From Haliotis rufescens (lineage: Eukaryota): 64,000 nucleotides of DNA. Both the position numbers and the translations under genes were made by a program. The notes under the pieces were generated by a model. It was not told the DNA's origin. It saw only the letters and a list, made by a program, of their open reading frames with translations, and ran no database searches. Position 1 is the first letter of the stretch, and each line of letters opens with the position of its first letter. Location: contig NW_025963779.1 of assembly GCF_023055435.1 (NCBI RefSeq), positions 88,102,001 through 88,166,000 of the forward strand. Reading direction: 5' to 3'. Of this stretch, positions 3,878-64,000 are shown piece after piece.

Positions 3878-4300
3878 CAAGTTTCAGGGGGTATCAATAC
3901 GTGTGTGCCTTTATGTTTCAGTACAGTATTGACATCTTTCAGTGCGGTATAGACATACGAATGTTTCCAAATTTCAGTACGGTATAGACTAACGTATGTT
4001 ACATGTTTCAGGGCGGCATAGATTGACGTATGTTTCCATGTTTCAGTGCGGTATGAACAGCTTTATGTTTCCATGTTTCAGTTGGGCATAGACTGACATA
4101 TGCCTCCATGTTTCAGTGCGGTAAAGACAACTGTATGTCTCCATGTTTCAGTGCGGTAAAGACAACTGTATGTCTCCATGTTTCAGTGCGGTATAGACTG
4201 ACGTATGCTACATGTTTCAGTGCGGTTAAGACAACTGTATGTCTCCATGTTTCAGTGCGGTATAGACTGACGTATGCTACATGTTTCAGTGCGGCATAGA
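3878..4300 (+). repeat. 34-35 bp tandem array built from the splice acceptor and start of exon 4290 (about 12 copies)
   Basis: Unit atgtttcagtgcggt(a/t)(t/a)agac... versus the real junction atgtttcag|tgcggcatagacagctgt. Confidence 0.9.
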
Positions 4301-4475
4301 CAGCTGTGTTCGGGAGAGTTACGCCATCCACCGACGGCGGGTGAAGTGTGTCCGCCTGGACAACAGCTCGGCGGTGGAGGAGCGGTACTGTAACGTCACC
4401 CTGAAGCCCCTCGCCCTCAGCGAGTGCCCCAACATACACTGCAAGTCCATGTGGAATGTCTCCGAGTGGTCCCAC
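4290..4475 (+). CDS. ADAMTS-like/punctin exon, TSP1-like repeat
   Basis: tttcag|TGC acceptor, CAC|gtgagt donor, 186 nt; CGIDSC...RRRVKC...YCNVTLKP...C...CKSMWNVSEWSH. Confidence 0.88.
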
Positions 4476-5325
4476 GTGAGTAGCACCTCATGCTCAAAAT
4501 ACTAAAAAACTTGCCCGTACTGACAGTACTGGTTCATACCTAGAGTATTGGCTCTAACTCCGGTGTCCCTCGACGCGACATTGCTGGAATATTGCTGAAA
4601 GCGGCATAAAACCATACTCACTCACTCACTCACTCACTACTGGTTGTGAGTGATACTCCTGGTTCTAGCTGGTTCATACTTAATCGTACTGAAAGTACTG
4701 GTTTACATCGAGAGTACTGGTTTGTCTATATATGAGATGGTACATTCAATACCAGGAACACCATGCGTGGAAGAGAGTGCTACACTCACATGCTGCATGT
4801 GATCTGGTCTAGACATCTGGGGCCGTATCATGCAACGACGCCTACCGACATCTAACCATCCCAATACCAACAGACCTTCAAACTGATAACATCCGACCAT
4901 CCAACTGATACGACCAGGCCATCCAGAGAATACAATAACAACTACCTGAAACATTTGCTCTGCCCTTGTGAAATCCTTCTGGCGCCATGATGACGTTACA
5001 GGAATGTTTGCGCAACGTCTAGTGACGTTCTCTGTAGACTGTGAGATATTCAACAGAATACCTAGAAGACATAAGTCGACATCTCTTCATCAAGAATGTA
5101 TTGACTATTACTGTATCTAATGGAGTAGAACAGAACTAGGATCACATTTAACGGTCACTTCATATATGGGTTAACTTTAAGGGTGATACACTAATGACAT
5201 TGCAAGTAGTCCACTTGCATTACTGTTTGAACTTTATGTCCTATGTGTAAGTATGATGCACCTGGCTCGACACTCCTTTCGATACATAATCCAGTTAATC
5301 AATGATATCCCTCTTTTACGATGGA

Positions 5326-5495
5326 GTGAGTGAGTGAGTGAGTATGGTTTTACGCCGCTTTTAGCAATATTCCAGCAATATCACGGCGGGGGACACCAGA
5401 AATGGGCTTCACACATTGTACCCATGTCGGGAATCAAACCCGGGTCTTCGGCGTGACGAGCGAACGCTTTAACCTCTAGGCTACCCGACCGCCCC
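5326..5495 (-). mobile_element. SINE family A
   Basis: Full copy; TSD ttttacgatgga. Confidence 0.93.
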
Positions 5496-5823
5496 CTTTT
5501 ACGATGGAACCAGGTTATCGCAACTCTGTACAAAATGTAGTGTACATATATCAGAATTCGTTATCCATACCTAGTACACACAATAGTTTGCATATGACAA
5601 AATACTGTTGTTATCACATATGGATTTGAACGATCATACGTTCCTGGCACAACTAAGGGACGCAACTCTTTACGTGTAGCGTTTGCTCGTTTAAGCACAC
5701 TTCTCTTCCTTCCACATGTATATGTTTGCACGTGTGTGTGCTGTAACAAGTTTAAATCCTCCTAAGAGAAATGTTCATCCTTGCTATGACTGATGATGTG
5801 GTTGTCTGTCGTGCATGTTGCAG

Positions 5824-5971: not shown

Positions 5972-5989
5972 GTAAGTACACGCTTTAAG

Positions 5990-6223: not shown

Positions 6224-8177
6224 CTTGCTATAAGGGTGGGTTTTATACATCAAGCTGAGCTCTTGGCATCAACACATGTGGAGTATTACCGTGATACTCG
6301 TACTGGTGTTGTTGTGATTAACAGAGTAAGCTGGATTTATAAACGCTGCTTTGAACAGTTTGTGTGGCAGCTTAATGTGAGAGGGAAGGAGAAATTTCAA
6401 ATCGTAGACATTTATCACTTCAGTGAAACACACGAGCATGGGTATGATGCTCATACACTTAATGCCATAATCAGGGAAACTGGGATTCGAACCCAAGATC
6501 AGAGGATCCTGGTACCTCTAAGGGCCTGCACAGCGTATTTCAACCACCAATTCGCTACAACGACCAACCAGTCTCCAGTGACATTTGTAGGACGTCGTGT
6601 GGAGTTGTCCAGTTGGTGTTTGAGTGAGTGATGTTTTGCGCCGCGTCATCGACATCCGAGCTGAATCACGGGTGTAGAGGACTGAGACTTATTCCACCGT
6701 GGATCCTAGCGTGGTTGTAGCCGCTGATTTACCTGTGGTGCAGTTGTATAAACAGATTGTACTGATTGTCATAACAATACATGTAGCAACACGCTTGATT
6801 ACGACAACTACAAGAATTACCGTGTTAACTCAATCTACCAACAGAACGCATGGGAATGAATATCATGAAAAGTTGTGTCATAAAACACGATTTTACGTTG
6901 TTAACAAACATTTAATATATTAAAACTCACATTGTATCATAATATGTCTCCGGGAACTAGACTTGCGCAAATCTATTAGGCAATAGTTATTAGTTTAAAT
7001 CATAAATTCTAGATTATGTAAATAACAAGAACAAGTTGTCCCTATAAGAGACTGGAGTCCTTAGGTGTACTGTCCACATATCTAGACTTGCCTATTAGGA
7101 GCATAGAATAACTACACAACGAAGGACTTTTCTTTCAGTACAGCCTTGGAGCAAGGTCACCGGGACACTAGAGAATACATTAGAACAGGAATCACGTCAG
7201 GAGGGGAATTATTTGCTCCCCAGTTCACGCTCCATTTTGATTTTACTTTTAAAAAGTTTTTATTTTGACGATATATATCTTCAACCATGAAAACTGTTTG
7301 ATCTGGGACAAAGTTAGTCTAATTGTATTGTTACCTTCTTTTACACGAAGAATCCTCGACAGCTACCAGAAAGGCTCGCTACAGTTGTTTCTCTTGTACA
7401 GCTGTACATAGCTCGTGTCATATTACGTCCCTTTACACGGATCATCTCGTGATGTATGTGCACTGTAGTAATAGCAGGCATTCCTGACAGGCTGAGGGAG
7501 ACTGAACGCCACGAGGAAACAAAGGCTCTGTACCAACACTTACTGGTGTTGACCTCAGCTCAGATAGCTCTGAACTACTGGTGCGTTCTCCAGTGCAATT
7601 TGTGGTAACAGCGCGTGGCATGAAAGCTAGTTGCAACCTCTACACTCTTTTCGTAATGATTTTCCATCGCATGCAACTAGTTGCTGTCGAGTGTAAAGAC
7701 ATAACTTGTATTATTTGTTGCAACAAGTTGCAGACACTCAACAAATATGATTGTGTAGATTTGTGTCGTTCTGAGAGTGAGATCCGTAATGTCAGAGCAA
7801 CGTGTGAAAAAAATTGATTTTACAAAAGGCGAACGATTCATCAGCTTAATTGTTGACGAATTAATGCGGTACTGTTTTAGCACAAGCAGAACTAAAAACC
7901 GCACCGAGAGCACGGAACTTGATGGGAACTGGACGCGACTCATTACCAGTTCCAGTCAGTCTGATTCAGATCTGTCCTCTTGTCTTATGGTGTATGGTAG
8001 TCTGACATGGTAGGGATACCCTTACTACACACACCGAGACACTATTTAAAACGTCTAGACCTGTACAGAACAAGGGACCTTTTAGTCAGGCCAAAACTCT
8101 ACGTCCGAACACAAATGGCGTGGATCGCGGAATAAGGCATACAGTTATAGTAATGTTGATGTTTTTTTCTCTTTCAG

Positions 8178-8290
8178 GCTGTAATGACGAGTCAGACTAC
8201 TGTAGTATCGTAAAGCTGATGAGGTTATGCCGCTTTATAAACTTTAGACAAAAGTGCTGTGCAAGCTGCAAAGATGAAATGACATCATGA
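8178..8290 (+). CDS. ADAMTS-like/punctin terminal exon, PLAC domain
   Basis: Polypyrimidine + cag|GC acceptor matches phase 1; CNDESDYCSIVKLMRLCRFINFRQKCCASCKDEMTS* has the six-Cys PLAC pattern; TGA at 8288-8290. Confidence 0.92.
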
Positions 8291-9198: not shown

Positions 9199-9200
<2 letters not shown>

Positions 9201-30620: not shown

Positions 30621-31286
30621 GGAAAAGTTGGTCTGTTTGCCTTGCTGCCTGCTCCAGTTCATGTGGCCAAGAAAGAATCCAACCGAATCCTCATCCCCCA
30701 CACCCTCACCAAGAGGCCGCAGAAACCATCGCCAAAGCCCCCACCTGCAAAACCCAAACCCAAGGTGGAGCAGGAGGCTGATGAATCGGGTTTCTCAAAG
30801 CGGTATACTGCCTTCAGTGGTTTAACGGGCTATGATTCTGACAGTGATGATGAAACAACAGTGAAATCAAACTTCTTCTCATTAGATTCTGAAACTGTTA
30901 AACAGAATTCTTCAGAAGTGATAGCAAATCCAGACATTGAGGAACCTGTTTCAAATCCCAAACCACTTTTGAGTGACAGTGTCGTGAAGGTGTCTCCTAA
31001 ACAGGAGAGTTCCTCAAGAACAGTAACTGTGAAGGCAGTGGATGAGTCAGTGCTACCAGTAGTGGTGAGTCATATCCCTCAAACAGAGACAGGTAGTGAC
31101 AGTGTGTCATCGGACGCTGTAGGTCAGTCTGTAGATCAGGATGCTCCCTTGGCGTTCAGGCCGACTGTGCCTCAACAGAATCTTCTCTCTGCTGCATCCA
31201 TGGGGACTCGCTACCAGTACATGCATACCGCCGGGACTGCACCACAGGAGCAGCAGTCATACCCTGCATACTCTTCATACCCTCAG
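30621..31286 (+). CDS. PRCC: PRCC exon 4
   Basis: ttgccag|GGA acceptor, CAG|gtcagt donor, 666 nt; GLFALLPAP...NRILIPHTLTKRP...DSDSDDE...NFFSL...DAPLAF are PRCC-type motifs. Confidence 0.92.
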
Positions 31287-33098
31287 GTCAGTGGTTGAAT
31301 CTTACAGTCATACCCTACACACAGGTCAGTGGTTGAATCTTACAGTCATACCCTACACACAGGTCAGGGGTTGAATCTTACAGTCATACCCTACACCCAC
31401 ATGTCAGTGGTTGAATCTAACAGTTATTCCCTACACACACAGGTCAGTGGTTGAATCTAACAGTCATACCCTACACACACAGGTCAGTGGTTGAATCTAA
31501 CAGTCATACCCTACACACACAGGTCAGTGGTTGAATCTTACAGTCATACCCTACACACACAGGTCAGTGGTTGAATCTTACAGTCATACCCTACACCCAC
31601 AGGTCAGTGGTTGAATCTAACAGTCATACCCTACACACACAGGTCAGTGGTTGAATCTAACAGTCATACCCTACACACACAGGTCAGTGGTTGAATCTAA
31701 CAGTCATACCCTACACACACAGGTCAGTGGTTGAATCTAACAGTCATACCCTACACACACAGGTCAGTGGTTGAATCTTACAGTCATACCCTACACACAT
31801 GTCAGTGGTTGAATCTAACAGTCATACCCTACACACAGGTCAGTGGTTGAATCAAACAGTCATACCCTACACACAGGTCAGTGGTTGAATCAAACAGTCA
31901 TACCCTACACACAGGTCAGTGGTTGAATCTTACAGTCATACCCTACACCCACATGTCAGTGGTTGAATCTTACAGTCATACCCTACACCCACAGGTCAGT
32001 GGTTGAATCTTACAGTCATACCCTACACCCACAGGTCAGTGGTTGAATCTTACTGTCATACCCTACACCCACAGGTCAGTGGTTGAATCTTACTGTCATA
32101 CCCTACACCCACATGTCAGTGGTTGAATCTTACAGTCATACCGTATATCGCTGTGTATAAGGCGATTCCACGTATAAGACGACCCCCCTGTACATGCCTT
32201 CAAAATCAACCCAAAATCCTATACTCCGTGTATAAGGCGACCTGGAATGAAGCACATCACAAGTGCGCACACAAACCTTATATATGCAATAAAAATATGT
32301 TTATCTTGCGTTGTTTTTTCTACGATGATTGGTTGCGTGTGTAACCTCAGCACGTTTCCATTTTGTGTTTACACGGTACGACACCAAATTGGTGCCCGTA
32401 AAATAAAATTCATATATGAAGTAATAACATATAAGAGACCATGGTGAGTAATTTAATCGCCAATTAACTATGTTGTAACTAACCATGCTTATGTTTGCTA
32501 CACATTCAGCGTGTTTATTCCACAATCACTTATACACACTGTCTCCAACAGTTGTTAATACAACTGTAAAAACAGCGGGAATTGATTTCAGCTTCACCGG
32601 TTATCACATTTTAGGTCACATGTGCAATATGCAAATGCTTACCGGTACTTCCGGCTCTCTACTCACGGATGTTGGTTGTTTTACTGTATCAGCTGGTTTG
32701 ACAATCTGCATCGAGGCGAGGGTCATTCCAACTTTATTTGCAGAAATTATTAAACTTTATTCAAGGAAAAGAGATACAAATCATGTTTATGTATGGAAAT
32801 AGTTATTGGAACAGTTATTTAGGACAAAATGCGAAGTTTTATTGTCAAATGCTGGGCTGGCTATCGGACGGCGGTTGCATCGCCAGTGGTAAAAAATGTG
32901 AGATCTTCGACTCCGTGTATAAGAGAACCCCCTGCTTAACCCCCTCATTTTAGGTACGAAAAACTCGCCTTATACACAGCGATATACGGTACCCTACACA
33001 TACAGGTCAGTGGTTGAATCTTCCAGTCATACCCTACACATACAGGTCAGTGGTTGAATCTTAGTCATACCCTACACATACAGGTCAGTGGTTGAATC
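31281..33098 (+). repeat. 38-40 bp tandem array containing the PRCC exon-4 donor (about 25 copies), interrupted by a MITE
   Basis: Unit cag|gtcagtggttgaatcttacagtcataccctacacaca; cagtcataccct also occurs in the exon 3' end. Confidence 0.95.
32141..32989. mobile_element. Tc2/pogo-like non-autonomous DNA transposon (849 bp)
   Basis: Perfect 25-bp TIR ccgtatatcgctgtgtataaggcga; TA duplicated at 32139-32140 and 32990-32991; splits one array unit (cagtcaTA|ccctacac). Confidence 0.93.
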
Positions 33099-33975: not shown

Positions 33976-34173
33976 TTCCTCCGACTCCAAGGCAAGAAGC
34001 ATCGTGGGAAGGAGGAGATTAACATCATCGATGCCAACATGGATGACTTCGTCAGCTCTGTTGATGTTGCCAAGAACCTGACGGAAGAGTCTTCGTATCA
34101 GTCGCACAAGAAGGACAACAACCCCACCCAGCAACAGCGCCGCAAGAAGCAGATCACCTACCTGGCCTTCCAG
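33976..34173 (+). CDS. PRCC: PRCC exon 6 (conserved C-terminal domain)
   Basis: ttgcag|TTC acceptor, CAG|gtatgt donor; FLRLQGKKHRGKEEINII...KNLTEE...PTQQQRRKKQITYLAFQ. Confidence 0.95.
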
Positions 34174-37100
34174 GTATGTAATAATGTAGATATCTCTGGC
34201 TGGGTATGTTGCTACATGTTGATATCCCTGGCTGGGTATGTTGCTGCATGTAGATATCTCTGGCTGGGTATGTTGCTATATGTTGATATCCCTGGCTGGG
34301 TATAATGCTACATGTAGATATCTCTGGCTGGGTATGTTGCTACATGTTGATATCCCTGGCTGGGTATGTTGCTACATGTTTATATCCCTGGCTGGGTATG
34401 TTGCTACATGTTGATATCTCTGGCTGGGTATGTTGCTACATGTTAATATCTCTGGCTGGGTATGTTGCTACATGTTGATATCTCTGGCTGGGTATGTTGC
34501 TACATGTTTATATCCCTGGCTGGGTATGTTGCTACATGTTTATATCCCTGGCTGGGTATGTTGCTACATGTTGATATCTCTGGCTGGGTATGTTGCTACA
34601 TGTTGATATCTCTGGCTGGGTATGTTGCTACATGTTGATATCTCTGGCTGGGTATGTTGCTACATGTTTATATCCCTGGCTGGGTATGTTGCTACATGTT
34701 GATATCTCTGGCTGGGTATGTTGCTACATGTTGATATCTCTGGCTGGGTATGTTGCTACATGTTTATATCCCTGGCTGGGTATGTTGCTACATGTTGATA
34801 TCTCTGGCTGGGTATGTTGCTACATGTTGATATCTCTGGCTTGGTATGTTGCTACATGTTGATATCTCTGGCTGGGTATGTTGCTACATGTTTATATCCC
34901 TGGCTGGGTATGTTGCTACATGTTGATATCTCTGGCTGGGTATGTTGCTACATGTTGATATCCCTGGCTGGGTATGTTGCTCCATGTTGATATCTCTGGC
35001 TGGGTATGTTGCTACATCCCTGGCTGGGTATGTTGCTACAGGTTGATATCTCTGGCTGGGTATGTTGCTACAGGTTGATATCTCTGGCTGGGTATGTTGC
35101 TACAGGTTGATATCTCTGGCTGGGTATGTTGCTGGAGTTGACATCTCTGGCTGGGTATGTTGCTGCATGTTGATTTCTCTGGCTGGGTATGTTGATATCC
35201 CTGGCTGGGTATGTTGCTCCATGTTGATATCCCTGGCTGGGTATGTTGCTACACGTAGATATCCCTGGCTGGGTATGTTGCTACATGTTGATATCCCTGG
35301 CTGGGTATGTTGCTACATGTTGATATCTCTGGCTTGGTATGTTGCTACATGTAGATATCTCTGCCTAGGTATGTTGCTACATGTTGATATTTCTGGCTGG
35401 GTATGTTGCTACATGTTGATATCTCTGGCTGGGTATGTTGCTACATGTTGATATCTCTGGCTGGGTATGTTGCTACATGTTGATATCCCTGGCTGGGTAT
35501 GTTGCTACATGTTGATATCTCTTGCTGGGTATGTTGCTACATGTTGATATCTCTGGCTGGGTATGTTGCTACAGGTTGATATCTCTGGCTGGGTATGTTG
35601 CTGCATGTTGATATCCCTGGCTGGGTATGTTGATATCCCTGTCTGGGTATGTTGCTACATGTTGATATCCCTGGCTGGGTATGTTGCTGCATGTTGATAT
35701 CCCTGGCTGGGTATGTTGCTACATGTTGATATCTCTGGCTGGGTATGTTGCTACATGTTGATATCTCTGGCTGGGTATGTTGCTACATGTTGATATCTCT
35801 GGCTGGGTATGTTGCTCTATGTTGATATCCCTGGCTGGGTATGTTGCTACATGTTGATATCTCTGGCTGGGTATGTTGCTACATGTTGATATCCCTGGCT
35901 GGGTATGTTGTTACAGGTTGATATCCCTGGCTGGGTATGTTGCTACATGTTGATATCTCTGGCTGGGTATGTTGCTGCATGTTGATATCTCTGGCTGGGT
36001 ATGTTGCTGCATGTTGATATCCCTGGCTGGGTATGTGGATACAGGTTGATATCCCTGGCTGGGTATGTTGCTACATGTAGATATCCCTGGCTGGGTATGT
36101 TGCTACATGTTGATATCTCTGGCTGGGTATGTTCCTGCATGTTGATATCCCTGGCTGGGTATGTTGCTACATGTAGATATCTCTGGCTGGGTATGTTGCT
36201 ACATGGGTATGTTGCTGGCTGGGTATGTTGCTGGCTGGGTATGTTGCTACACGTAGATATCTCTGGCTGGGTATGTTGCTGCATGTTGATATCCCTGGCT
36301 GGGTATGTTGCTGCATGTTGATATCCCTGGCTGGGTATGTTGCTACAGGTTGATATCCCTGGCTGGGTATGTTGCTGCATGTTGATATCTCTTAATGGGT
36401 ATGTTGCTGCATGTTGATATCCCTGGCTGGGTATGTTGCTACATGTTGATATCTCTGGCTGGGTATGTTGCTACAGGTTGATATCTCTGGCTGGGTATGT
36501 TGCTACATGTTTATATCCCTGGCTGGGTATGTTGCTACAGGTTTATATCTCTGGCTGGGTATGTTGCTCCATGTTGATATCCCTGGCTGGGTATGTTGCT
36601 ACATGTTGATATCCCTGGCTGGGTATGTTGCTACATGTAGATATCCCTGGCTGGGTATGTTGCTACATGTTGATATCCCTGGCTGGGTATGTTGCTACAC
36701 GTAGATATCTCTGGCTTGGTATGTTGCTACATGTTGATATCTCTGGCTGGGTATGTTGCTCTATGTTGATATCCCTGGCTGGGTATGTTGCTACATGTTG
36801 ATATCTCTGGCTGGGTATGTTGCTACATGTTGATATCCCTGGCTGGGTATGTTCCTGCATGTTGATATCCCTGGCTGGGTATGTTGCTACATGTAGATAT
36901 CTCTGGCTGGGTATGTTGCTACATGTAGATATCCCTGGCTGGGTATGTTGCTACATGTTGATATCTCTGGCTGGGTATGTTCCTGCATGTTGATATCCCT
37001 GGCTGGGTATGTGGATACAGGTTGATATCCCTGGCTGGGTATGTTGCTACATGTAGATATCCCTGGCTGGGTATGTTGCTACATGTTGATATCTCTGGCT

Positions 37101-38568
37101 GGGTATGTTCCTGCATGTTGATATCCCTGGCTGGGTATGTTGCTACATGTAGATATCTCTGGCTGGGTATGTTGCTACATGGGTATGTTGCTGGCTGGGT
37201 ATGTTGCTACATGTAGATATCTCTGGCTGGGTATGTTGCTGCATGTTGATATCCCTGGCTGGGTATGTTGCTGCATGTTGATATCCCTGGCTGGGTATGT
37301 TGCTACAGGTTGATATCCCTGGCTGGGTATGTTGCTGCATGTTGATATCTCTTAATGGGTATGTTGCTACATGTTGATATCCCTGGCTGGGTATGTTGCT
37401 ACATGTTTATATCCCTGGCTGGGTATGTTGCTACATGTTTATATCCCTGGCTGGGTATGTTGCTACATGTTTATATCCCTGGCTGGGTATGTTGCTACAT
37501 GTTGATATCCCTGGCTGGGTATGTTGCTGCATGTTGATATCCCTGGCTGGGTATGTTGCTACATGTTGATATCCCTGGCTGGGTATGTTGCTACATGTTG
37601 ATATCTCTGGCTGGGTATGTTGCTACAGGTTGATATCTCTGGCTGGGTATGTTGCTACATGTTTATATCCCTGGCTGGGTATGTTGCTACAGGTTTATAT
37701 CTCTGGCTGGGTATGTTGCTACATGTTGATATCTCTGGCTGGGTATGTTGCTCCATGTTGATATCCCTGGCTGGGTATGTTGCTACATGTTGATATCCCT
37801 GGCTGGGTATGTTGCTACATGTAGATATCCCTGGCTGGGTATGTTGCTACATGTTGATATCCCTGGCTGGGTATGTTGCTACACGTAGATATCTCTGGCT
37901 GGGTATGTTGCTACATGTTGATATCTCTGGCTGGGTATGTTGCTCTATGTTGATATCCCTGGCTGGGTATGTTGCTGCATGTTGATATCTCTGGCTGGGT
38001 ATGTTGCTACATGTTGATATCTCTGGCTGGGTATGTTGCTCTATGTTGATATCCCTGGCTGGGTATGTTGCTGCATGTTGATATCTCTGGCTGGGTATGT
38101 TGCTACATGTTGATATCTCTGGCTGGGTATGTTGCTACATGTTTATATCCCTGGCTGGGTATGTTGCTACATGTTGATATCCCTGGCTGGGTATGTTGCT
38201 GCATGTTGATATCCCTGGCTGGGTATGTTGCTACATGTTGATATCCCTGGCTGGGTATGTTGCTACATGTTGATATCTCTGGCTGGGTATGTTGCTACAG
38301 GTTGATATCTCTGGCTGGGTATGTTGCTACATGTTTATATCCCTGGCTGGGTATGTTGCTACATGTTGATATCTCTGGCTGGGTATGTTGCTCCATGTTG
38401 ATATCCCTGGCTGGGTATGTTGCTACATGTTGATATCCCTGGCTGGGTATGTTGCTACATGTAGATATCCCTGGCTGGGTATGTTGCTACATGTTGATAT
38501 CCCTGGCTGGGTATGTTGCTACACGTAGATATCCCTGGCTTGGTATGTTGCTACATGTAGATATCCCT
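34174..38568 (+). repeat. 32 bp minisatellite filling PRCC intron 6 (about 137 copies)
   Basis: Unit gtatgttgctacatgttgatat(c/t)cctggctgg; the first copy starts at the donor gtatgt. Confidence 0.97.
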
Positions 38569-38616: not shown

Positions 38617-38703
38617 GCCAAAGAGAGAGAGTTGGAGCTGAAGAACTCGTGGGCCCAGAGTCGGATGACCAAGCGACAGACACAGGCCAAATATGGCTTC
38701 TGA
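38617..38703 (+). CDS. PRCC: PRCC terminal exon 7
   Basis: tttttcag|GCC acceptor; AKERELELKNSWAQSRMTKRQTQAKYGF* is the hallmark PRCC C-terminus; spliced CDS totals 1461 nt (486 aa). Confidence 0.96.
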   Translation, partial: AKERELELKNSWAQSRMTKRQTQAKYGF

Positions 38704-40352: not shown

Positions 40353-40454
40353 ATGGCACACAAATGCCTTTTGCCTAAATCCATATGTAGAGGCTGCTTT
40401 TTATGATTACTTTACATTTCTGTCAACAGATGTCAGTGTGTGCACCTATAAGAG

Positions 40455-43705: not shown

Positions 43706-43829
43706 TCCTCATGATAAAGGAGTTGACATGTTCCTAACCCTATGTTACTGTAGTTTCCAGGTATGCTGACACTAGCAAGCAACGAAATGTTCAGAAAAAT
43801 ACATTCATTTCTTTTATTGTTGCTTCAAT

Positions 43830-44050
43830 TGGTTTGGTTTGGTTTGTTGTTTAACGCCGCACTTAGCAATATTCCAACTATATGACCGCGGTCTGTAAAT
43901 AATGGAGTCTGGACCAGACAATCCAGTAATTGACATCATGAGCATCGATCCTCGCAATTGGGATACAATGACATGCCTCAACCAAGTCAGCGAGCCGACC
44001 ACCCGATCCCGATAGTGGCCTCTTACGACAAGCATAGTCGCCTTTTACAG
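43830..44050 (-). mobile_element. SINE-like family B
   Basis: Consensus match, 5'-truncated. Confidence 0.85.
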
Positions 44051-49281: not shown

Positions 49282-49415
49282 CTTTATCTCTCCACCGAGA
49301 GCCAAGTGTTTGGGGTAGGAGCGTCAATAAAGTCACAAATCCTAGTATGGCGAAGCCGCCTGGCACGATGGACTGGACCAGGCGGTAGAAAGGTACACAC
49401 AGTGGGCAGCAGTCT
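49282..49415 (-). CDS. MFSD12: MFSD12 canonical last-TM exon
   Basis: ttgcag|A phase-2 acceptor, G|gtatga phase-1 donor; DCCPLCVPFYRLVQSIVPGGFAILGFVTLLTLLPQTLGSRWRDK resembles MFSD12 CCRACVSFYHW...GG. Confidence 0.9.
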
Positions 49416-49494
49416 CTGCAAGGATCAACAACATGTCTTGTGCAGTCTCTTTATCACACATGTTGGCAGTGAAACACACTGCAACATAATAACT

Positions 49495-49940
49495 ATGTTG
49501 ATAATCAAACACATTGTTACACATGTTGACAATTAAAAACATTGTAAGATGTCTTGACAGTCAAACACATTGTTACACGCTGACAACTAAAACCATTGTA
49601 ACATATGTTGACAGTCAAACACATTGTTACACATGGTGACTACTAAAACCATTGTAACATATGTTGACAGTCAAACACATTGTTACACATGGTGACAACT
49701 AAAACCATTGTAACATCTAAAACCATTGTAACATATGTTGACAGTCAAACACATTGTTACACATGGTGACAACTAAAACCATTGTAACATCTAAAACCAT
49801 TGTAACATATGTTGACAGTCAAACACATTGTTACACATGGTGACAACTAAAACCATTGTAACATCTAAAACCATTGTAACATATGTTGACAGTCAAACAC
49901 ATTGTTACACATGGTGACAACTAAAACCATTGTAACATAT
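49495..49940. repeat. Compound minisatellite about 80 nt upstream (on -) of the MFSD12 acceptor at 49416
   Basis: Alternating gttgacagtcaaacacattgttacacat and ggtgacaactaaaaccattgtaacat subunits. Confidence 0.9.
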
Positions 49941-49975
49941 AAGCAGAGACACTTGTCTTTATTCACACAATGATA

Positions 49976-51430: not shown

Positions 51431-54400
51431 CCAGTCACTGCCCCACCTCACCCCAGACACTACACCACCTCATCAAAGTCACTGCCCCACCTCACCCCAG
51501 ACACTGCCTCACCTCATCCCAGTCACTGCCCCACCTTACCCCAGTCACTGCCCCACCTTACCCCAATCACTGCCCCATCTCACCCCAGTCACTGCCCCAT
51601 CTCACCCCAGACACTACACCACCTCATCAAAGTCACTGCCCCACCTCACCCCAGACACTGCCTCACCTCATCCCAGTCACTGCCCCACCTTACCCCAGTC
51701 ACTGCCCCACCTTACCCCAATCACTACATCACCTCACCCCAGACACTGCCCCATCTCACCCCAGTCACTGCCCCACCTCACCCCAGACACTACACCACCT
51801 CATCAAAGTCACTGCCCCACCTCACCTCAATCACTGCACCACCTCACCCCAGACACTGCCTCACCTCATCCCAGCCACTGCCCCACCTTACCCCAATCAA
51901 AACATCACCTCACCCCAGACACTGCCCCACCTTACCCCAATCACTGCCCCATCTCACCCCAGTCACTGCCCCATCTCACCCCAGACACTACACCACCTCA
52001 TCCCAGTCACTGCCCCACCTCATCCCAGTCACTGCCCCACCTTACCCCAATCACTACATCACCTCACCCCAGACACTGCCTCACCTCATCCCAGTCACTG
52101 CCCCACCTTACCCCAATCACAACATCACCTCACCCCAGACACTGCCTCACCTCATCCCAGTCACTGCCCCACCTTACCCCAATCACAACATCACCTTACC
52201 CCAGTCACTGCCCCACCTCATCCAAACAACTACCTCACCAAAACCCCAATCACTACACCACCTCACCCCATCACTACACCACCTCATCAGAGTCACTACC
52301 CCACCTCACCCCAATCACTGCCTCACATCACCAAAAACACTACACCTACTCACCCCATCACTGCACCATCTCTTCATAGTCACTACCCCACCTCACCCCA
52401 ATCACTACACCACCTCACCCAAGTCACTGCCCCACCTCACCCCGACAACTACCTCACCTCAACCCAATCACTACACCACCTCACCCAAATCACTACACCA
52501 CCTCTCCCCAATCACTACACCACCTCACCCAAATCACTACACCACCTCACCCAAATCACTGCCCCACCTTACCCCATCACTGCACCACCTAACCCCAATC
52601 ACTACACCACCTGACCCCCTCAATTCACCACCTCACCCCAATCACTACACCACCTCATCCCATCACTACACCACCTCACCCCAATCACTACACAACCTTA
52701 CCCCATCACTGCCCCACCTCAACCCATTACTACACCACCTCACCCCATCACTACACCACCTCACCCCAGACACTACACCATCTCATCAAAGTCACTGCCC
52801 CATCTCACCCCAGACACTACACCACCTCATCAAAGTCACTGCCCCACCTCACCCCAATCACTGCACCACCTCACCCCAGACACTGCCTCACCTCTTCCCA
52901 GTCACTGCCCCATCTCACCCCAGACATTGCACCACCTCACCCCAGACACTGCCTCACCTCATCCCAGTCACTGCCCCACCTCATCCCAACAACTACCTCA
53001 CCAAAACCCCAATCACTACACCACCTCACCCCATCACTGCACCACCTCATCAGAGTCACTACCCCACCTCACCCCAATCAATGCCTCACCTCACCAAAAA
53101 CACTACATCACCTCACCCCATCACTGCACCATCTCATCATAGTCACTACCCCACCTCACCCCAATCACTACATCACCTCACCCTAGTCACTGCCCCACCT
53201 CACCCCAACAACTACCTCACCTCAACCCAATCACAGCACCACCTCACCCGAATCACTACACCACCTCTCCCCAATCACTACACCACCTCACCGCAATCAC
53301 TACACCACCTCACCCAAATCACTGCACCACCTTACCCCATCACTGCCCCACCTAACCCCAATCACTACACCACCTCACCCAATCAATACACCACCTCACC
53401 CCAATCACTACACCACCTCACCCCAGACACTGCCCCACCTCAACTCATTACTACACCACCTCACCCCAGTCACTGCCCCATCTCACCCCATCACTGCCCC
53501 ACCTAACCCCAATCACTACACCACCTCACCCCATCAATACCCCACCTCACCCAAATCACCGCCTCACCTCACCAAAAACACTACACCACCTCACCCCATC
53601 ACTGCACCATCTCATCATAGTCACTACCCCATCTCACCCCAATCACTACATCACCTCACCCAAGTCACTGCCCCACCTCACCCCAACAACTACCTCACCT
53701 CAACCCAATCACTACACCACCTCACCCCAATCACTATACCACCTCACCCAAATCACTGCACCACCTTACCCGATCACTGCCCCACCTAACCCCAATCACT
53801 ACACCACCTCAACCCATCAATTCACCACCTCACCCCAATCACTACGCCACCTCACCCCATCATCACTGCCCCACCTCAACCAATTACTACACCACCTCAC
53901 CCCAGACACTACACCACCTCATCAAAGTCACTGCCCCACCTCACCCCAATCACTGCATGACTTCACCCCAGACACTGCCTCACCTCATCAAAGTCACTGC
54001 CCCACCTCAACCCAATCACTGCACCACCTCACCCCAGACACTGCCTCACCTCATCCCAGTCACTGCCCCACCTTACCCCAATCACTACATCACCTCAACC
54101 CAGACACTGCCTCACCTCATCCCAGTCACTGCCCCACCTTACCCCAATCACTACATCACCTCACCCCAGACACTGCCTCACCTCACCCCAGTCACTGCCC
54201 CATCTAACCCCAGACACTACACCACCTTAACCCATCAATTCACCACCTCACCCCAATCACTACGCCACCTCACCCCATCATCACTGCCCCACCTCAACCA
54301 ATTACAACACCACCTCACCCCAGACACTACACCACCTCATCAAAGTCACTGCCCCACCTCACCCCAATCACTGCATGACTTCACCCCAGACACTGCCTCA

Positions 54401-55590
54401 CCTCATCAAAGTCACTGCCCCACCTCACCCCAATCACTGCACCACCTCACCCCAGACACTGCCTCACCTCATCCCAGTCACTGCCCCACCTTACCCCAAT
54501 CACTACACCACCTCACCCCAGTCACTGCACCACCTCACCCCAGACACTGCCTCACCTCATCCCAGTCACTGCCCCATCTCACCCCAATCACTACACCACC
54601 TCACCCCATCACTGCACCACCTCATCAGAGTCACTACCCCACCTCACCCTAATCACTACCTCACCTCACCAAAAACACTACACCACCTCACCCCATCACT
54701 GCACCATCTCATCATAGTCACTACCCCACCTCACCCCAATCACTACAACACCTCACCCAAGTCACTGCCCCACCTCACCCCAACAACTACCTCACCTCAA
54801 CCCAATCACTACACCACCTCACCCCAATCACTACACCACCGCACCCTATCACTGCCCCATCTCACCCCAGTCACTGCCCGATCTCACCCCATCACAGCAC
54901 CACCTCATCAGAGTCACTACCCCACCTCACCCTAATCACTGCCTCACCTCACCAAAAACACTACACCACCTCACCCCATCACTGCACCATCTCATCATAG
55001 TCACTACCCCTCCTCACCCCAATCACTACATCACCTCACCCAAGTCACTGCCCCACCTCACCCCAATCACTACATCACCTCACCCAAGTCACTGCCCCAC
55101 CTCACCCAAACAACTACCTCACCTCAACCCAATCACTACACCACCTCACCCCAATCACTACACCACCGCACCCTATCACTGCCCCATCTCACCCCAGTCA
55201 CTGCCCGATCTCACCCCATCACAGCACCCCATCACAGCACCACCTCACCCCAGTCACTACACCACCTCACCCCAGTCACTGCCCCACCTCACCCCATCAC
55301 TGCCCTACCTCACCCTAATCACTACACCACCTCACCCCAATCACTACACCACCGCACCCTATCACTGCCCCATCTCACCCCAGTCACTGCCCGATCTCAC
55401 CCCATCACAGCACCCCATCACAGCACCACCTCACCCCAATCACTACATCACCTCACCCAAGTCACTGCCCCACCTCACCCCTACAACTACCTCACCTCAA
55501 CCCAATCACTACACCACCTCACCCTAATCACTACACCACCGCACCCCATCACTGCCCTACCTCACCCTAATCACTACACCACCTCACCCC
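51431..55590. repeat. About 22 bp C-rich minisatellite with higher-order blocks (about 4.2 kb)
   Basis: Unit cagtcactgccccacctcaccc / caatcactacaccacctcaccc; source of the 713-aa and 403-aa P/H/T-rich ORFs. Confidence 0.96.
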
Positions 55591-55851
55591 ACAATACCTA
55601 GCCTTCCTACCCAATGGGGCAAACAAGCAATATGTGTGTGGGAAGTGTAACCCTAAATCATTGTTTGGGGAACTCTAGGTTTTTCTATACAAATTTAGAT
55701 AAAATGTGATTGCGATTAAAAGAAGAAACCAATACCAGATTGTGATAATAAGCAGAAAGCAAGAGAAAAGAGAAAGCTTTGACAAGAACCAATGCAGAAG
55801 ACGGATATTCAAGTGGCCAGACAACAGAGCGAACCATTAGTACAGCATTCA

Positions 55852-58840: not shown

Positions 58841-59307
58841 CTGCACAGAAAAGGGATGAAGTCACTTCATGGCATAACCACAGTCACTTCATGACAATGA
58901 AGGTCAGAGCAGAAGCCACTAGATGACATGGGTAACCCAGTGGTCTAAGGCAGCACAATTTGATGGAGTTTTATCCTATAATCAAGCCAGCAACCTGTGA
59001 TCCTGGGTACAAATCCCAGTTCACCCAGATTATGTTGCTAGGTTCGTCAGCATCAAACCCAGCAAGGGAACAATCTGGCCGGATATATTTTGCAGGCGTT
59101 ACTTACTTACTTACTTATATTGGAGATTTAACGTGCGCTTTCCGACTGCAAGCGTATGTCGCACGCGGTTGTGGGCATTGCTTTAGACTGTCTTAAGTAT
59201 CTTTTTTCATTTCATAAGTTAGATAAAAGACTTCCTCTCAGGTTTTTCCTGTGGATGTGGGTTTCAGACATTACAAAAACCTTCAGACATGCTTTAACAT
59301 ACACATA

Positions 59308-61331
59308 ACCTATTGCCTGCAGTTTCACCTTTTGTAACCTATTGCCTTGCAGTTTCACCTATTGTAACCTATTGTCTTGAAGTTTCACCTATTGTAACCT
59401 ATTGCCTTGCAGTTTAACCTTTTGTAACCTATTGTCTTGCAGTTTCACCTTTTGTAACCTATTGCCTTGCAGTTTCACCTATTGTAACCTATTGTCTTGA
59501 AGTTTCACCTATTGTAACCTACTGCCTTGCAGTTTAACCTTTTGTAACCTATTGTTTTGCAGTTTCACCTTTTGTAACCTATTGTCTTGCTGTTTCGCCT
59601 ATTGTAACCTATTGTCTTGCTGTTTCACCTGTTATAGCCTATTGTCTTGCAGTTTCACCTATGGTAACCTATTGTCTTGCTTTTTAACCTATTGTCACCT
59701 ATTGTCTTGCAGTTTCACCTATTGTAACCTATTGCCTTGCAGTTTCACCTTTTGTAACCTATTGTCTTGCTGTTTCACCTATTGCAACCTACTGCCTTGC
59801 AGTTTCAACTTTTGTAACCTATTGTCTTGCTGTTTCACCTATTGCAGTTTCACCTATTGCAACCTATTGTCATGCAGTTTAACCTATTGTAACCTATTGT
59901 CTTACAGTTTAACCTATTGTAACCAATTGTCTTGCTGTTTCACCTATTGCAACCTATTGTCTTACAGTTTAACCTTTTGCAGTTTCACCTATTGCAACCT
60001 ATTGTCATGCAGTTTAACCTATGGTAACCTACTGTCTTACAGTTTAACCTATTGTAACCTATTGTCTTGCTGTTTCACCTATTGCAACCTATTGTCTTAC
60101 AGTTTCACCTGTTATAGCCTATTGTCTTGCTGTTTAACCTTTTGTAACCTATTGTCTTGCAGTTTAACCTTTTGTAACCTATTGTCTTGCAGTTTAACCT
60201 ATTGCAACCTATTGTCTTACAGTTTCACCTGTTATAGCCTATTGTCTTACAGTTTCACCTGTTATAGCCTATTGTCTTACAGTTTCACCTGTTATAGCCT
60301 ATTGTCTTGCTGTTTAACCTATTGCAACCTATTGTCTTACAGTTTTACCTGTTATAGCCTAATGTCTTACAGTTTCACCTGTTATAGCCTATTGTCTTAC
60401 TGTTTAACCTTTTGTAACCTATTGTCTTACAGTTTCACCTGTTATAGCCTATTGTCTTACAGTTTCACCCGTTATAGCCTATTGTCTTGCTGTTTAACCT
60501 TTTGTAACCTATTGTCTTGCTGTTTCACCTATTGTGACCTATTGTCTTAAAGTTTCACCTGTTATAGCCTATTGTCTTGCAGTTTCACCTGTTATAGCCT
60601 ATTGTCTTGCTGTTTAACCTTCTGTAACCTATTGTCTTAAAGTTTCACCTGTTATAGCCTATTGTCTTGCTGTTTAACCTTTTGTAACCTATTGTCTTGC
60701 TGTTTCACCTTTTGTAACCTATTGTCTTGCAGTTTCACCTTTTGTAACCTTTTGTCTTACAGTTTCACCTATTGTAACCTATTGTCTTGCTGTTTAACCT
60801 TTTGTAACCTATTGTCTTGCTGTTTAACCTTTTGTAACCTATTACCTTGCTGTTTCACCTTTTGTAACCTATTGTCTTGCTGTTTCACCTATTGTAACCT
60901 ACTGCCTTGCTGTTTCACCTATTGTAACCTATTGTCTTACAGTTTCACCTATTGTAACCTATTGTCTTGCTGTTTCACCTTTTGTTACCTATTGTCTTGC
61001 TGTTTAACCTTTTGTTACCTATTGCCTTGCTGTTTCACCTTTTGTAACCTATTGTCTTGCTGTTTCACCTTTTGTTACCTATTGTCTTACAGTTTCACCT
61101 TTTGTAACCTATTGTCTTGCTGTTTAACCTTTTGTAGCCTATTGTCTTGCTGTTTAACCTTTTGTTACCTATTGTCTTGCAGTTTACCCTTTTGTTACCT
61201 ATTGCCTTGCAGTTGCACCTATGGTAACCTATTGCCTTGCAGTTTCACCTATGGTAACCTATTGCCTTGCAGTTTCACCTATGGTAACCTATTGCCTTGC
61301 AGTTTCACCTATGGTAACCTATTGCCTTGCA
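59308..61331. repeat. 30 bp minisatellite (about 67 copies) starting about 25 nt after the MFSD12 donor at 61357
   Basis: Unit aacctattgtcttgcagtttcacctattgt; source of the CNLLSCSFTY ORFs. Confidence 0.96.
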
Positions 61332-61357
61332 ATCCTGTATGCTGTGCCCGCACTCAC

Positions 61358-61450
61358 CTTCCTCCCGAACAGCTTGTTGACTGGCTTCATGACGAGTGAG
61401 GTGAAGAACCCACACACATACACGATCAGAGGCACAATGGCAATGTTGGT
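61358..61450 (-). CDS. MFSD12: MFSD12 exon (MFS transporter; lysosomal/melanosomal cysteine importer family)
   Basis: ttcttcag|ACC acceptor, AAG|gtgagt donor, 93 nt; TNIAIVPLIVYVCGFFTSLVMKPVNKLFGRK resembles MFSD12 [24 protein letters not shown]. Confidence 0.92.
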
Positions 61451-61625
61451 CTGAAGAAAGGTAAACAAATATCAAATATCCGTCAATGTCTAATCATACA
61501 AGAATGATTTGTACATAAAGCAGAACATGTTGCAAATGTGTGAAGACGTAAAAGCATTCATCTATCACTGTATCATAAATTTAGGCAGAAACAAAATTCT
61601 TGCAGTCCTGATTATATACTGGAGT

Positions 61626-64000
61626 GGTAGAAAGACCTGTGACAGGTTCACATACTATCTGGTACCCATGTATACAACCAACATACCTTGTCTAAAGGCA
61701 GTGTCTCCACTAGATACATACATAGGTAGATAGACCTGTGACAGGTTCACATACTATCTGGTACCCATGTATACAACCAACATACCTTGTCTAAAGGCAG
61801 TGTCTCCACTAGATACATACATAGGTAGAGAGACCTGTGACAGGTTCACATACCCTCTGGTACCCATGTATACAACCAACATACCTTGTCTAAAGGCAGT
61901 GTCTCCACTAGATACATACATAGGTAGAGAGACCTGTGACAGGTTCACATACTCTCTGGTACCCATGTATACAACCCACATACCTTGTTGAGTTGCAGTG
62001 TCTCCACTAGATACATAGGTAGATAGACCTGTGACAGGTTCACATACAGTCTGGTACACATGTATACAACCAACATACCTTGTTGAGATGCAGTGTCTCC
62101 ACTAGATACATAGGTAGATAGACCTGTGACAGGTTCACATACAGTCTGGTACCCATGTATACAACCAACATACCTTGTTGAGACGCAGTGTCTCCACTAC
62201 ATACATACATAGGTAGATAGACCTGTGACAGGTTCACATACAGTCTGGTACACATGTATACAACCAACATACCTTGTTGAGATGCAGTGTCTCCACTAGA
62301 TACATACATAGGTAGATAGACCTGTGACAGGTTCACATACAGTCTGGTACACATGTATACAACCAACATACCTTGTTGAGTTGCAGTCTCTCCACTAGAT
62401 ACATAGGCAGAAAGACCTGTGACAGGTTCACATACAGTCTGGTACACATGTATACAACCAACATACCTTGTTGAGATGCAGTGTCTCCACTAGATACATA
62501 GGTAGATAGACCTGTGACAGGTTCACATACAGTCTGGTACCCATGTATACAACCAACATACCTTGTTGAGATGCAGTGTCTCCACTAGATACATACATAG
62601 GTAGATAGACCTGTGACAGGTTCACATACAGTCTGGTACACATGTATACAACCAACATACCTTGTTGAGATGCAGTGTCTCCACTAGATACATAGGTAGA
62701 TAGACCTGTGACAGGTTCACATACAGTCTGGTACCCATGTATACAACCAACATACCTTGTTGAGTTGCAGTCTCTCCACTAGATACATAGGCAGAAAGAC
62801 CTGTGACAGGTTCACATACAGTCTGGTACACATGTATACAACCAACATACCTTGTTGAGATGCAGTGTCTCCACTAGATACATAGGTAGATAGACCTGTG
62901 ACAGGTTCACATACAGTCTGGTACCCATGTATACAACCAACATACCTTGTTGAGATGCAGTGTCTCCACTAGATACATACATAGGTAGATAGACCTGTGA
63001 CAGGTTCACATACAGTCTGGTACACATGTATACAACCAACATACCTTGTTGAGATGCAGTGTCTCCACTAGATACATAGGTAGATAGACCTGTGACAGGT
63101 TCACATACAGTCTGGTACCCATGTATACAACCAACATACCTTGTTGAGTTGCAGTCTCTCCACTAGATACATAGGCAGAAAGACCTGTGACAGGTTCACA
63201 TACAGTCTGGTACACATGTATACAACCAACATACCTTGTTGAGATGCAGTGTCTCCACTAGATACATAGGTAGATAGACCTGTGACAGGTTCACATACAG
63301 TCTGGTACCCATGTATACAACCAACATACCTTGTTGAGTTGCAGTCTCTCCACTAGATACATAGGCAGAAAGACCTGTGACAGGTTCACATACAGTCTGG
63401 TACACATGTATACAACCAACATACCTTGTTGAGATGCAGTGTCTCCACTAGATACATAGGTAGATAGACCTGTGACAGGTTCACATACAGTCTGGTACCC
63501 ATGTATACAACCAACATACCTTGTTGAGATGCAGTGTCTCCACTAGATACATACATAGGTAGATAGACCTGTGACAGGTTCACATACAGTCTGGTACACA
63601 TGTATACAACCAACATACCTTGTTGAGATGCAGTGTCTCCACTAGATACATACATAGGTAGATAGACCTGTGACAGGTTCACATACAGTCTGGTACACAT
63701 GTATACAACCAACATACCTTGTTGAGATGCAGTGTCTCCACTAGATACATACATAGGTAGATAGACCTGTGACAGGTTCACATACAGTCTGGTACCCATG
63801 TATACAACCAACATACCTTGTTGAGATGCAGTGTCTCCACTAGATACATACATAGGTAGATAGACCTGTGACAGGTTCACATACAGTCTGGTACACATGT
63901 ATACAACCAACATACCTTGTTGAGATGCAGTGTCTCCACTAGATACATAGGTAGATAGACCTGTGACAGGTTCACATACAGTCTGGTACACATGTATACA
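61626..64000 (-). repeat. 95/99 bp tandem array of an entire MFSD12 exon plus its donor site (about 25 copies, continues past the window end)
   Basis: Each unit encodes LVVYMCTRLYVNLSQVYLPMYLVETLHLNK (MFSD12 LYMTTRLIVNLSQTYMAMYL...LHLPK) and is followed by gtatgt. Confidence 0.93.

What the first reader, a model, noticed from the sequence alone, without database searches (positions are those of the whole stretch)
3878..64000. Recurrent splice-junction-seeded tandem arrays across all three genes
Seen: at least four large intronic arrays start exactly at an exon boundary and their unit contains that boundary. They are the ADAMTSL acceptor array (3878-4300), the PRCC exon-4 donor array (31281-33098), the PRCC exon-6 donor array (34174-38568) and the MFSD12 whole-exon + donor array (61626-64000). 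Two more lie within about 25-80 nt of MFSD12 junctions (59308-61331, 49495-49940). The units are unrelated to each other (30, 32, 34, 40, 95 bp), so this is not one satellite family spreading; each arose locally. Established: tandem duplication of an AG|GT segment is a proposed route to intron gain or growth. Inference: this genome may have a transcription- or splicing-coupled mechanism (R-loops, repair slippage at junctions) that amplifies junctions into kb-scale arrays. It may also need a way to pick the true site among tens to more than 100 decoys.
Basis: partly seen in the sequence, partly recalled or inferred. Interest (0 to 1): 0.88.

Follow-up and report, generated by a model that had tools for sequence, protein, structure and literature searches.

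The report
Minisatellites that copy splice junctions
In this repeat-rich animal genome, several introns consist mostly of locally born tandem repeats whose unit copies the neighbouring exon end and its splice site, leaving tens to over a hundred intact decoy splice sites; arrays also cluster at exon ends more than chance predicts, for an unknown reason.

Summary
TRF finds 12 large arrays covering 28% of the window. In three of them the unit demonstrably copies a splice junction: the ADAMTSL-like acceptor, the PRCC exon-4 donor and an MFSD12 exon tail plus donor. A fourth, in PRCC intron 6, starts at intron base +1. Two more arrays end 27 and 74 nt from MFSD12 junctions. The units are unrelated to each other, and the three arrays I searched each occur at a single locus.

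Corrections: the arrays begin inside the exon, by 12 to 87 nt, not at the boundary. The authentic MFSD12 exon lies just beyond the window. A transposon splits the PRCC exon-4 array.

Eight kinesin genes chosen before I looked for repeats gave four more junction-containing arrays, against 0.8-1.0 expected (P 0.005-0.012). Seven of their ten arrays lie within 50 nt of a known exon end, against 1.2-1.5 expected (P ≤ 1e-4). A myosin gene gave a fifth.

Best reading: ordinary local tandem duplication and slippage in a minisatellite-saturated genome. The copies are tolerated because the exon-proximal site is used, and decoy use hits an early stop codon or shifts the frame. A splicing- or transcription-coupled cause is neither shown nor excluded.

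Other first-stage notes report the same pattern elsewhere in this genome (APEH, YARS2, WARS1, TSFM, NOL11, calpain-15). No RNA or cross-species test could be run.

The parts
3878..4303 (+). Acceptor-junction array in an ADAMTSL-like gene. The 35-bp unit is a branch-point-like ctgac, a pyrimidine tract and cag, plus the first 12 exon nt. About 10 copies, with older, more diverged copies upstream.
   Evidence: TRF (3933-4303, 80% matches); sequence; unit alignment
4290..4475 (+). ADAMTSL-like TSP1 exon whose acceptor is copied. The upstream exon ends at 3773.
   Evidence: Pfam TSP1_ADAMTS on ORFs 2910-3863 and 4266-4502; PLAC in the last exon 8006-8287; the true join reads ..GNWSD|CGIDSC, and decoy use gives a stop
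31000..31286 (+). 3' part of PRCC exon 4; donor cag|gtcagt at 31286|31287
   Evidence: ORF 30540-31295; sequence; frame and stop at intron +10
31284..32142 (+). Donor-junction array, first part. The 40-42-bp unit is the exon tail plus the first 15 intron nt. With the second part (32990-33098) it holds 24 copies, all with an intact caggtcagt.
   Evidence: TRF; single locus in the genome
32143..32989 (+). Transposon-like insertion with 23-nt terminal inverted repeats that splits the array
   Evidence: Sequence; inverted ends
32990..33098 (+). Remainder of the same array; 138 nt of unique intron follow before exon 5 (33237-33320)
   Evidence: TRF; sequence
33976..34173 (+). PRCC exon 6; donor ccag|gtatgt at 34173|34174
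   Evidence: Sequence; ORF
34174..38568 (+). 32-bp array that fills PRCC intron 6 from base +1. 131-137 copies, each with tgg|gtatgt. Only 48 unique nt remain before exon 7.
   Evidence: TRF; single locus
38617..38703 (+). PRCC last coding exon (..QTQAKYGF, then stop)
   Evidence: Pfam PRCC PF10253, E 3.3e-9
61626..64000 (-). 95-bp array of the MFSD12 exon tail (87 coding nt) plus donor aag|gtatgttg. About 29 copies in all. It runs on to 64481, and the authentic exon is at 64399-64497, outside the window.
   Evidence: TRF; tblastn with MFSD12 homologues P0041, P0037 and P0127
61358..61450 (-). Next MFSD12 exon (TNIAIVPLIVYVCGFFTSLVMKPVNKLFGRK)
   Evidence: tblastn; sequence
59306..61331 (-). 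30-bp array that ends 27 nt downstream of that exon's donor. Its unit has ag|gtgaaa, but no demonstrable copy of the junction.
   Evidence: TRF
49490..49942 (-). 28/56/74-bp array that ends 74 nt upstream of the acceptor of MFSD12 exon 49281-49416; it does not contain the junction
   Evidence: TRF; tblastn

Best explanation
These are ordinary minisatellites, each born on the spot in a genome saturated with them. A short tandem duplication of 30-95 bp happened to span an exon-intron junction and was then expanded by replication slippage or unequal exchange. A junction-spanning duplication is tolerated because the coding exon stays intact. For a duplicated donor, the copy attached to the exon (the most upstream) is used and every later copy lies inside the intron. 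For a duplicated acceptor, the copy attached to the exon (the most downstream) is used. Occasional use of a decoy shifts the frame or meets a stop codon within 10-233 nt, so such transcripts should be removed by nonsense-mediated decay.

The arrays look as if they start exactly at the boundary because of geometry. The host introns had little unique sequence (about 58-173 nt in the window), so a 30-95-bp duplication there often overlaps a junction, and the exonic part of the first unit is counted as exon.

Shown: the anatomy, the local origin, the intact decoys, the reading-frame consequences and the excess near exon ends. Inferred: the duplication and slippage mechanism, which site is actually used, and decay of decoy transcripts. 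Unexplained: why arrays favour the neighbourhood of exons.
For: Arrays cover 28% of the window. They occur about once per 4-5 kb in the other loci of this genome.

Eight of the 12 window arrays and six of the 10 kinesin-sample arrays do not contain a junction.

The units are unrelated, and the three arrays searched are each single-locus.

The junction sits anywhere within the unit: exon shares are 12/35, about 22/40, 87/95, about 33/49, about 2/43, 8/31, about 62/83 and 20/83. This fits random breakpoints.

A CDK-like kinase has a 29-bp array that duplicates its stop codon and the end of its coding sequence (L021 2361-2475). It is the same tolerated overlap at a non-splice boundary.

Decoy sites match the true site and are intact in at least 90% of copies. 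Read-through or decoy use gives an early stop or a frameshift in every case.

Identical decoy donors downstream of the true one stay silent in the human F7 IVS7 minisatellite (PMC1557585).

Genome-wide, triple AGGTRAGT arrays give 9320 matches against 7497 for the reversed motif, so units are not generally built on donor consensus.
Against: Uniform seeding under-predicts what is seen:
- Window: 4 observed, about 0.3-0.5 expected.
- Kinesin sample chosen beforehand: 4 junction-containing arrays against 0.8-1.0 expected (P 0.005-0.012).
- Same sample: 7 of 10 arrays within 50 nt of an exon end against 1.2-1.5 expected (P ≤ 1e-4), also after masking detected SINEs.
- Placing each kinesin-sample array only within its own host intron still leaves about a 2.5-fold excess (hand calculation).

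SINE copies look older (81% pairwise identity) than the arrays (94-97% identity to their consensus). Dilution of deep introns by younger DNA is therefore a weak escape, although concerted evolution can keep arrays looking young.

No RNA data could be obtained, so silence of the decoys is assumed, not shown.
Confidence: 0.55

Rival explanations
1. An exon- or junction-targeted mutational process, coupled to germline transcription, splicing or chromatin, makes short tandem duplications or their expansion more likely within about 100 nt of exon ends. Candidates are R-loops at unspliced junctions, polymerase pausing, and nucleosome-phased Okazaki-flap errors of the kind seen in FEN1/rad27 mutants. 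Junction arrays would then be the surviving subset.
For: There is an excess of arrays at or near exon ends in a sample chosen beforehand and in the window. Donors outnumber acceptors 7 to 2 among junction-containing arrays. About 26 loci of a muscle-type myosin II cluster carry no array, while kinesin, an unconventional myosin, PRCC and MFSD12 carry many. This would fit a dependence on germline transcription. Other first-stage notes list many more cases in this genome, unverified.
Against: Breakpoints are not anchored at the junction. The small sample (10 arrays, 8 genes) gives a wide interval, roughly 1.3- to 10-fold. The donor excess can come from selection against duplicated 3' splice sites. 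The myosin cluster may lack arrays because highly expressed genes keep short introns, or because the paralogues are young. The genome-wide donor-motif excess is only 1.24x. Nothing here measures transcription or R-loops.
Confidence: 0.3
2. The arrays are kept by selection because they do something. Rows of U1-binding decoy donors (or decoy 3' sites) next to an exon could strengthen recognition of the true site, suppress premature polyadenylation in the lengthened intron, or provide regulated unproductive splicing that tunes expression.
For: The donor motif is intact in at least 90% of 24, 131 and 29 copies. None of the nine junction-array unit lengths (35, 40, 32, 95, 49, 43, 31, 83, 83) is a multiple of 3 (chance 2.6%), so decoy use would always be unproductive.
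Against: All unit positions are about equally conserved, so the splice motif is not specially protected. The arrays are young and vary in higher-order structure. Arrays near exons that lack any splice motif are equally enriched. No expression data are available.
Confidence: 0.08
3. The arrays, or their length, are assembly artefacts.
For: Long tandem arrays are where assemblers most often err. No reads could be laid on them.
Against: Copies carry ordered variants and higher-order periods, such as 289 bp in the 95-bp array and 80 bp in the 32-bp array. A transposon sits inside one array, which resumes in register after it. The same anatomy recurs at independent loci.
Confidence: 0.04
4. The arrays are pieces of a dispersed satellite or transposon family that landed next to exons, and the likeness to the exon end is coincidence.
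For: Some arrays of this genome recur at more than one locus: a 49-bp unit lies beside two kinase genes (L013 and L014).
Against: The three junction arrays searched match only their own locus in 1.33 Gb. The 95-bp unit encodes 29 conserved MFSD12 residues. The units share nothing with each other.
Confidence: 0.03

Closest known systems
Human F7 intron 7 37-bp VNTR (Borensztajn et al. 2006, PMC1557585)
   Same: It is a minisatellite whose first unit spans the exon-intron boundary, so the authentic donor is followed by identical pseudo-donors. The most upstream site is the one used.
   Different: F7 has a handful of copies at one human locus. Here there are 5 to about 137 copies at many independent loci of one invertebrate genome. 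Acceptor-side arrays also occur, and one unit includes almost a whole exon. Site usage was not tested here.
Minisatellite providing multiple splice donors in the interferon-induced 6-16 (IFI6) gene (Turri et al. 1995; recalled from memory, not read here)
   Same: A tandem repeat at an exon end that multiplies the donor site.
   Different: There the 12-nt unit is in frame and the alternative donors are used. Here the units are never a multiple of 3, and decoy use would be unproductive.
Intron gain by tandem duplication of an AGGT-containing exon segment (Rogers model; Hellsten et al. 2011, PMC3265369; Ma et al. 2016, PMC4974935)
   Same: A local tandem duplication creates duplicated splice signals, and the copy between them is spliced out.
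   Different: Those events create a new intron from exon sequence. Here the introns already existed: each keeps a unique 3' part with its own polypyrimidine tract and AG, and the units include intron-only sequence. The result is intron growth, not intron gain.
Introner-like elements and other dispersed intron-generating repeats
   Same: Repeats that carry splice signals and shape introns.
   Different: Introners are multi-copy and dispersed. The three junction arrays searched here are each single-locus, and all the array units are mutually unrelated.
Duplications and minisatellite instability of yeast rad27/FEN1 mutants (Tishkoff et al. 1997; Lopes et al. 2002; from memory)
   Same: Short duplications flanked by microhomology, and expansion of minisatellites, as a genome-wide mutational style.
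   Different: This is only an analogy for how a genome could become so rich in minisatellites. Nothing about FEN1 was tested here.

Membership tests
Junction-spanning minisatellite with duplicated splice sites (F7 IVS7 type) | Head-to-tail array whose terminal unit overlaps the exon-intron boundary | tested here: met
   for the window; for five further loci. For PRCC intron 6 the array starts at intron +1 and its exon share is weak.
Junction-spanning minisatellite with duplicated splice sites (F7 IVS7 type) | Pseudo-sites identical or nearly identical to the authentic site | tested here: met
   the motif is intact in at least 90% of copies. Positions -3 to +8 are identical for PRCC exon 4 and for MFSD12. 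The PRCC exon 6 decoys read tgg|gtatgt against cag|gtatgt.
Junction-spanning minisatellite with duplicated splice sites (F7 IVS7 type) | Pseudo-sites silent; the exon-proximal site is used | not testable with these tools
Intron gain by tandem duplication (Rogers model) | The new intron is made only of duplicated exon sequence, bounded by the two copies of AGGT | tested here: not met
   The units include intron-only sequence, and each intron keeps a unique 3' end with its own acceptor region: 48 nt, 138 nt and about 175 nt.
Dispersed satellite, introner or transposon-borne array | The same unit at many loci | tested here: not met
   only the home locus matches. One 70%-identity hit inside an unrelated 32-bp array on C401 does not change this; no similarity among the units.
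PRCC / MFSD12 / ADAMTSL gene identity | Exons match the family profile or homologues | tested here: met
   PRCC PF10253, E 3.3e-9. MFSD12-like exons match P0041, P0037 and P0127 in colinear order. TSP1_ADAMTS, Ig and PLAC domains.

The most novel reading that the evidence does not exclude
This genome has a mutational process that preferentially creates or expands 20-100-bp tandem duplications within about 100 nt of exon ends, possibly in germline-transcribed genes. As a result several percent of all splice junctions carry arrays of tens to hundreds of intact decoy sites. That would make it a major, previously undescribed route of intron growth and a genome-scale natural experiment in splice-site choice.
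Probability: 0.3. Interest if true: 0.85.

Novelty: new variant of a known kind. Interest (0 to 1): 0.58.

Why it matters
Single junction-spanning minisatellites are known, such as the one in human F7. What seems unreported in the papers I could search is a genome where they are routine. In the sample chosen beforehand, about 4% of junction sides carried one, and introns grew from a few hundred bases or less (about 60-520 nt of unique sequence) to kilobases this way.

If the excess near exons holds on a full annotation, it points to an exon-proximal source of tandem duplication. Even if it does not, the genome may offer thousands of natural constructs, each with 5 to over 100 identical donors or acceptors in a row. 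These could test how the spliceosome picks the right site, and how much unproductive splicing and nonsense-mediated decay a cell tolerates.

Tried and rejected
Only 8 of about 38 kinesin genes and none of the multi-exon kinase loci could be fetched.
- Pkinase loci: these are mostly intronless genes, so they say nothing about junctions.
- Genome-wide motif test: the ratio to the reversed motif is 1.24. It has little power, because none of the 7 verified donor arrays carries AGGTRAGT.
- Two-copy duplications as a picture of array birth: too few to use.
- Counting the scan's notes as a rate: the word match is loose (423 and 1201 'fits'), so I used them only as leads.
- Dilution of deep introns by younger transposon DNA as the cause of the excess: weakened by SINE copies being only 81% alike.
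- Satellite-family and assembly-artefact readings: rejected.
- Intron gain: rejected, because the introns pre-exist.
Full report
**What is there**

The window is G000:C1:88102001-88166000 of a 1.33-Gb, 615-contig animal assembly. TRF finds 12 large arrays that together cover about 18 kb, or 28% of the window. There are no N runs.

Three genes are present:
- The 3' end of an ADAMTSL-like gene on the + strand, with TSP1_ADAMTS, Ig and PLAC domains.
- PRCC on the + strand. Its last exon matches Pfam PRCC at E 3.3e-9.
- An MFSD12-like transporter on the - strand. Its exons align in colinear order with full-length homologues P0041, P0037 and P0127, found with one exon as query.

All protein searches were done exon by exon, by reference.

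**The four junction arrays**

1. ADAMTSL-like acceptor. The upstream exon ends at 3773 (..GNWSD|gtaagt) and the next exon starts at 4290 (tgcggcatagac = CGID). The 35-bp unit holds ctgac, a pyrimidine tract, cag and the first 12 exon nt. Each of about 10 copies is therefore a complete-looking 3' splice site.

2. PRCC exon 4 donor. The exon ends at 31286 (cag|gtcagt). The 40-42-bp unit is the exon tail plus the first 15 intron nt, in 24 copies. An element of about 850 bp with 23-nt inverted ends sits at 32143-32989. The array resumes afterwards, and 138 unique nt precede exon 5 at 33237.

3. PRCC exon 6 donor. The exon ends at 34173. A 32-bp array of 131-137 copies starts at intron +1 and leaves only 48 unique nt before exon 7 at 38617. 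Likeness to the exon tail is weak (cctggc only).

4. MFSD12. The 95-bp unit encodes 29 conserved residues (VVYMxTRLYVNLSQVYLPMYLVETLHLNK) followed by gtatgttg. The authentic exon is the first copy, at 64399-64497, just beyond the window (L002). The array runs from 64481 down to 61626, about 29 copies, and about 175 unique nt follow before the next exon at 61450-61358.

Two further arrays end 27 nt after a donor (59306-61331) and 74 nt before an acceptor (49490-49942). Neither contains the junction.

**Local origin**

The 12 array units share no similarity. The three arrays I searched match only their own locus in the genome. Ordered variants, higher-order periods and the transposon inside one array argue against assembly artefact.

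**Decoys**

The splice motif is intact in at least 90% of copies, and no unit position stands out as specially conserved or decayed. The true sites differ from the decoys only in being attached to the exon.

Reading on from the exon meets a stop at intron +10 for PRCC exon 4. In the other donor cases the first stop begins at +39 to +231. Using the nearest decoy acceptor in the ADAMTSL-like gene gives ..WSDVRYRLTYATCFSAA and then a stop. None of the nine junction-array unit lengths is a multiple of 3.

**Is it more than chance?**

Collapse each array to one unit and let the founding duplication fall anywhere. The expected number of junction-containing arrays is then the sum of unit lengths, times the number of junction sides, divided by the array-free length. 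For the window this is 469 x 31 / 45,961 = 0.32, against 4 observed.

It consists of eight kinesin genes from the Pfam PF00225 rows (L064-L071, 56 kb, 31 known exons) and the myosin loci.

TRF found 10 arrays in the kinesin loci. Four contain a junction:
- L066 4018-4959: exon tail ..GSNELTGENCS plus gtgagg.
- L066 2373-2536: an acceptor array.
- L069 2890-3447: cactcaag|gtgaga, 18 copies.
- L070 3124-4352: exon tail VEGAHINRSLLALGNCINAL plus gtaagt, 15 copies.

These were read. An unconventional myosin adds a fifth: L051, exon tail DECNFPQ plus gtcagt, 83 bp x 5.

Permutation results for the kinesin sample:

| Measure | Observed | Expected | P |
|---|---|---|---|
| Arrays containing a junction | 4 | 0.8-1.0 | 0.005-0.012 |
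| Arrays within 50 nt of a known exon end | 7 of 10 | 1.2-1.5 | ≤ 1e-4 |

These values hold with or without masking detected SINEs. The excess is therefore real in this small sample.

It is weaker under a stricter null in which each array may fall only inside its own host intron. That gives about 1.45 and 2.9 expected for the kinesin sample, and about 2.5 expected against 4 observed for the window (hand calculation). Much of the effect is thus that arrays sit in introns with little unique sequence, where overlapping a junction is geometrically likely.

**What argues against a splice-site-specific mechanism**

- The junction lies anywhere within the unit. The exon share runs from about 2 of 43 nt to 87 of 95 nt.
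- Arrays close to exons but without a junction are enriched about as much.
- A kinase gene has an array that duplicates its stop codon instead of a splice site.
- Genome-wide, three AGGTRAGT motifs at 23-53-nt spacing give 9320 matches against 7497 for the reversed motif. This test is weak, because none of the seven verified donor arrays has that consensus.

**What keeps a targeted process alive**

- The excess itself.
- Donors outnumber acceptors 7 to 2 among junction-containing arrays.
- The muscle-type myosin II cluster has no arrays at all.
- SINE copies look older than the arrays (81% pairwise identity against 94-97% to consensus), so dilution by young DNA is not an easy explanation.

**Comparison with what is known**

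The human F7 intron 7 VNTR is the same anatomy at one locus. Experiments there show that the most upstream of identical donors is chosen and the others stay silent (PMC1557585).

Tandem duplication as a source of new introns is established (PMC3265369, PMC4974935). Here, however, the introns pre-exist and simply grow. My literature searches found no genome-wide report of junction-seeded arrays.

Other first-stage notes on this genome describe the same thing in APEH, calpain-15, YARS2, TRIP13, WARS1, TSFM, NOL11 and a kinesin. These are unverified leads. One may be the L070 array that I found independently.

**Limits**

**Verdict**

Local origin and recurrence are confirmed, and an excess near exon ends is supported. 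The proposed splicing-coupled amplification is unproven and not needed for the anatomy. A dedicated system for avoiding decoys is not required by what is known.

Noticed in passing
window 32143-32989: Element of about 850 bp with 23-nt terminal inverted repeats (cgtatatcgctgtgtataaggcg), inserted inside the PRCC exon-4 array. The array continues in register after it.
   Followed up: partly
L021:2361-2475 (G000:C594, about 51.89 Mb): A 29-bp x 4 array that duplicates the last codons and the stop codon of a CDK-like kinase. It is the same kind of tolerated overlap, but at the end of a coding sequence instead of a splice site.
   Followed up: partly
nine junction-containing arrays (window, L051, L066, L069, L070): The unit lengths 35, 40, 32, 95, 49, 43, 31, 83 and 83 are never a multiple of 3 (chance about 2.6%).
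   Followed up: partly
G000:C113:13.93-14.29 Mb (L036-L050, L052, L056, L058, L059, L061-L063): Cluster of about 15 tandem muscle-type myosin heavy-chain paralogues with short introns and no minisatellite at all, in contrast with the kinesin, PRCC and MFSD12 genes.
   Followed up: no
window 51431-55591: A 4.2-kb C-rich 22/66-bp array deep in an MFSD12 intron. It produces spurious open frames of up to 723 codons on the + strand.
   Followed up: no
window 38981-40371: A 20-bp x 69 array that begins about 120 nt after an aataaa signal downstream of the PRCC stop codon.
   Followed up: no
window 26242-26523, 43821-44058, 41426-41660 and many others: SINE-like interspersed repeats of 170-280 nt, shared with up to 23 unrelated loci of the sample. 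Copies are about 81% alike. They cover at least 15-40% of most of the loci examined.
   Followed up: partly
L003 (G000:C401:1529000-1538900): Three unrelated arrays (23, 32 and 31 bp) fill 73% of 9.9 kb. The 32-bp one gave the only off-locus hit (70% identity) to the MFSD12 95-bp unit.
   Followed up: no
L013:3173-3759 and L014:1-1036: The same 49-bp unit forms arrays downstream of two kinase genes on different contigs (C334 and C223), so not every array of this genome is single-locus.
   Followed up: no
L004-L008 (G000:C13:14.815-14.825 Mb): Tandemly repeated intronless kinase genes, about 2 kb apart, separated by 218-bp x 3.3 repeats.
   Followed up: no
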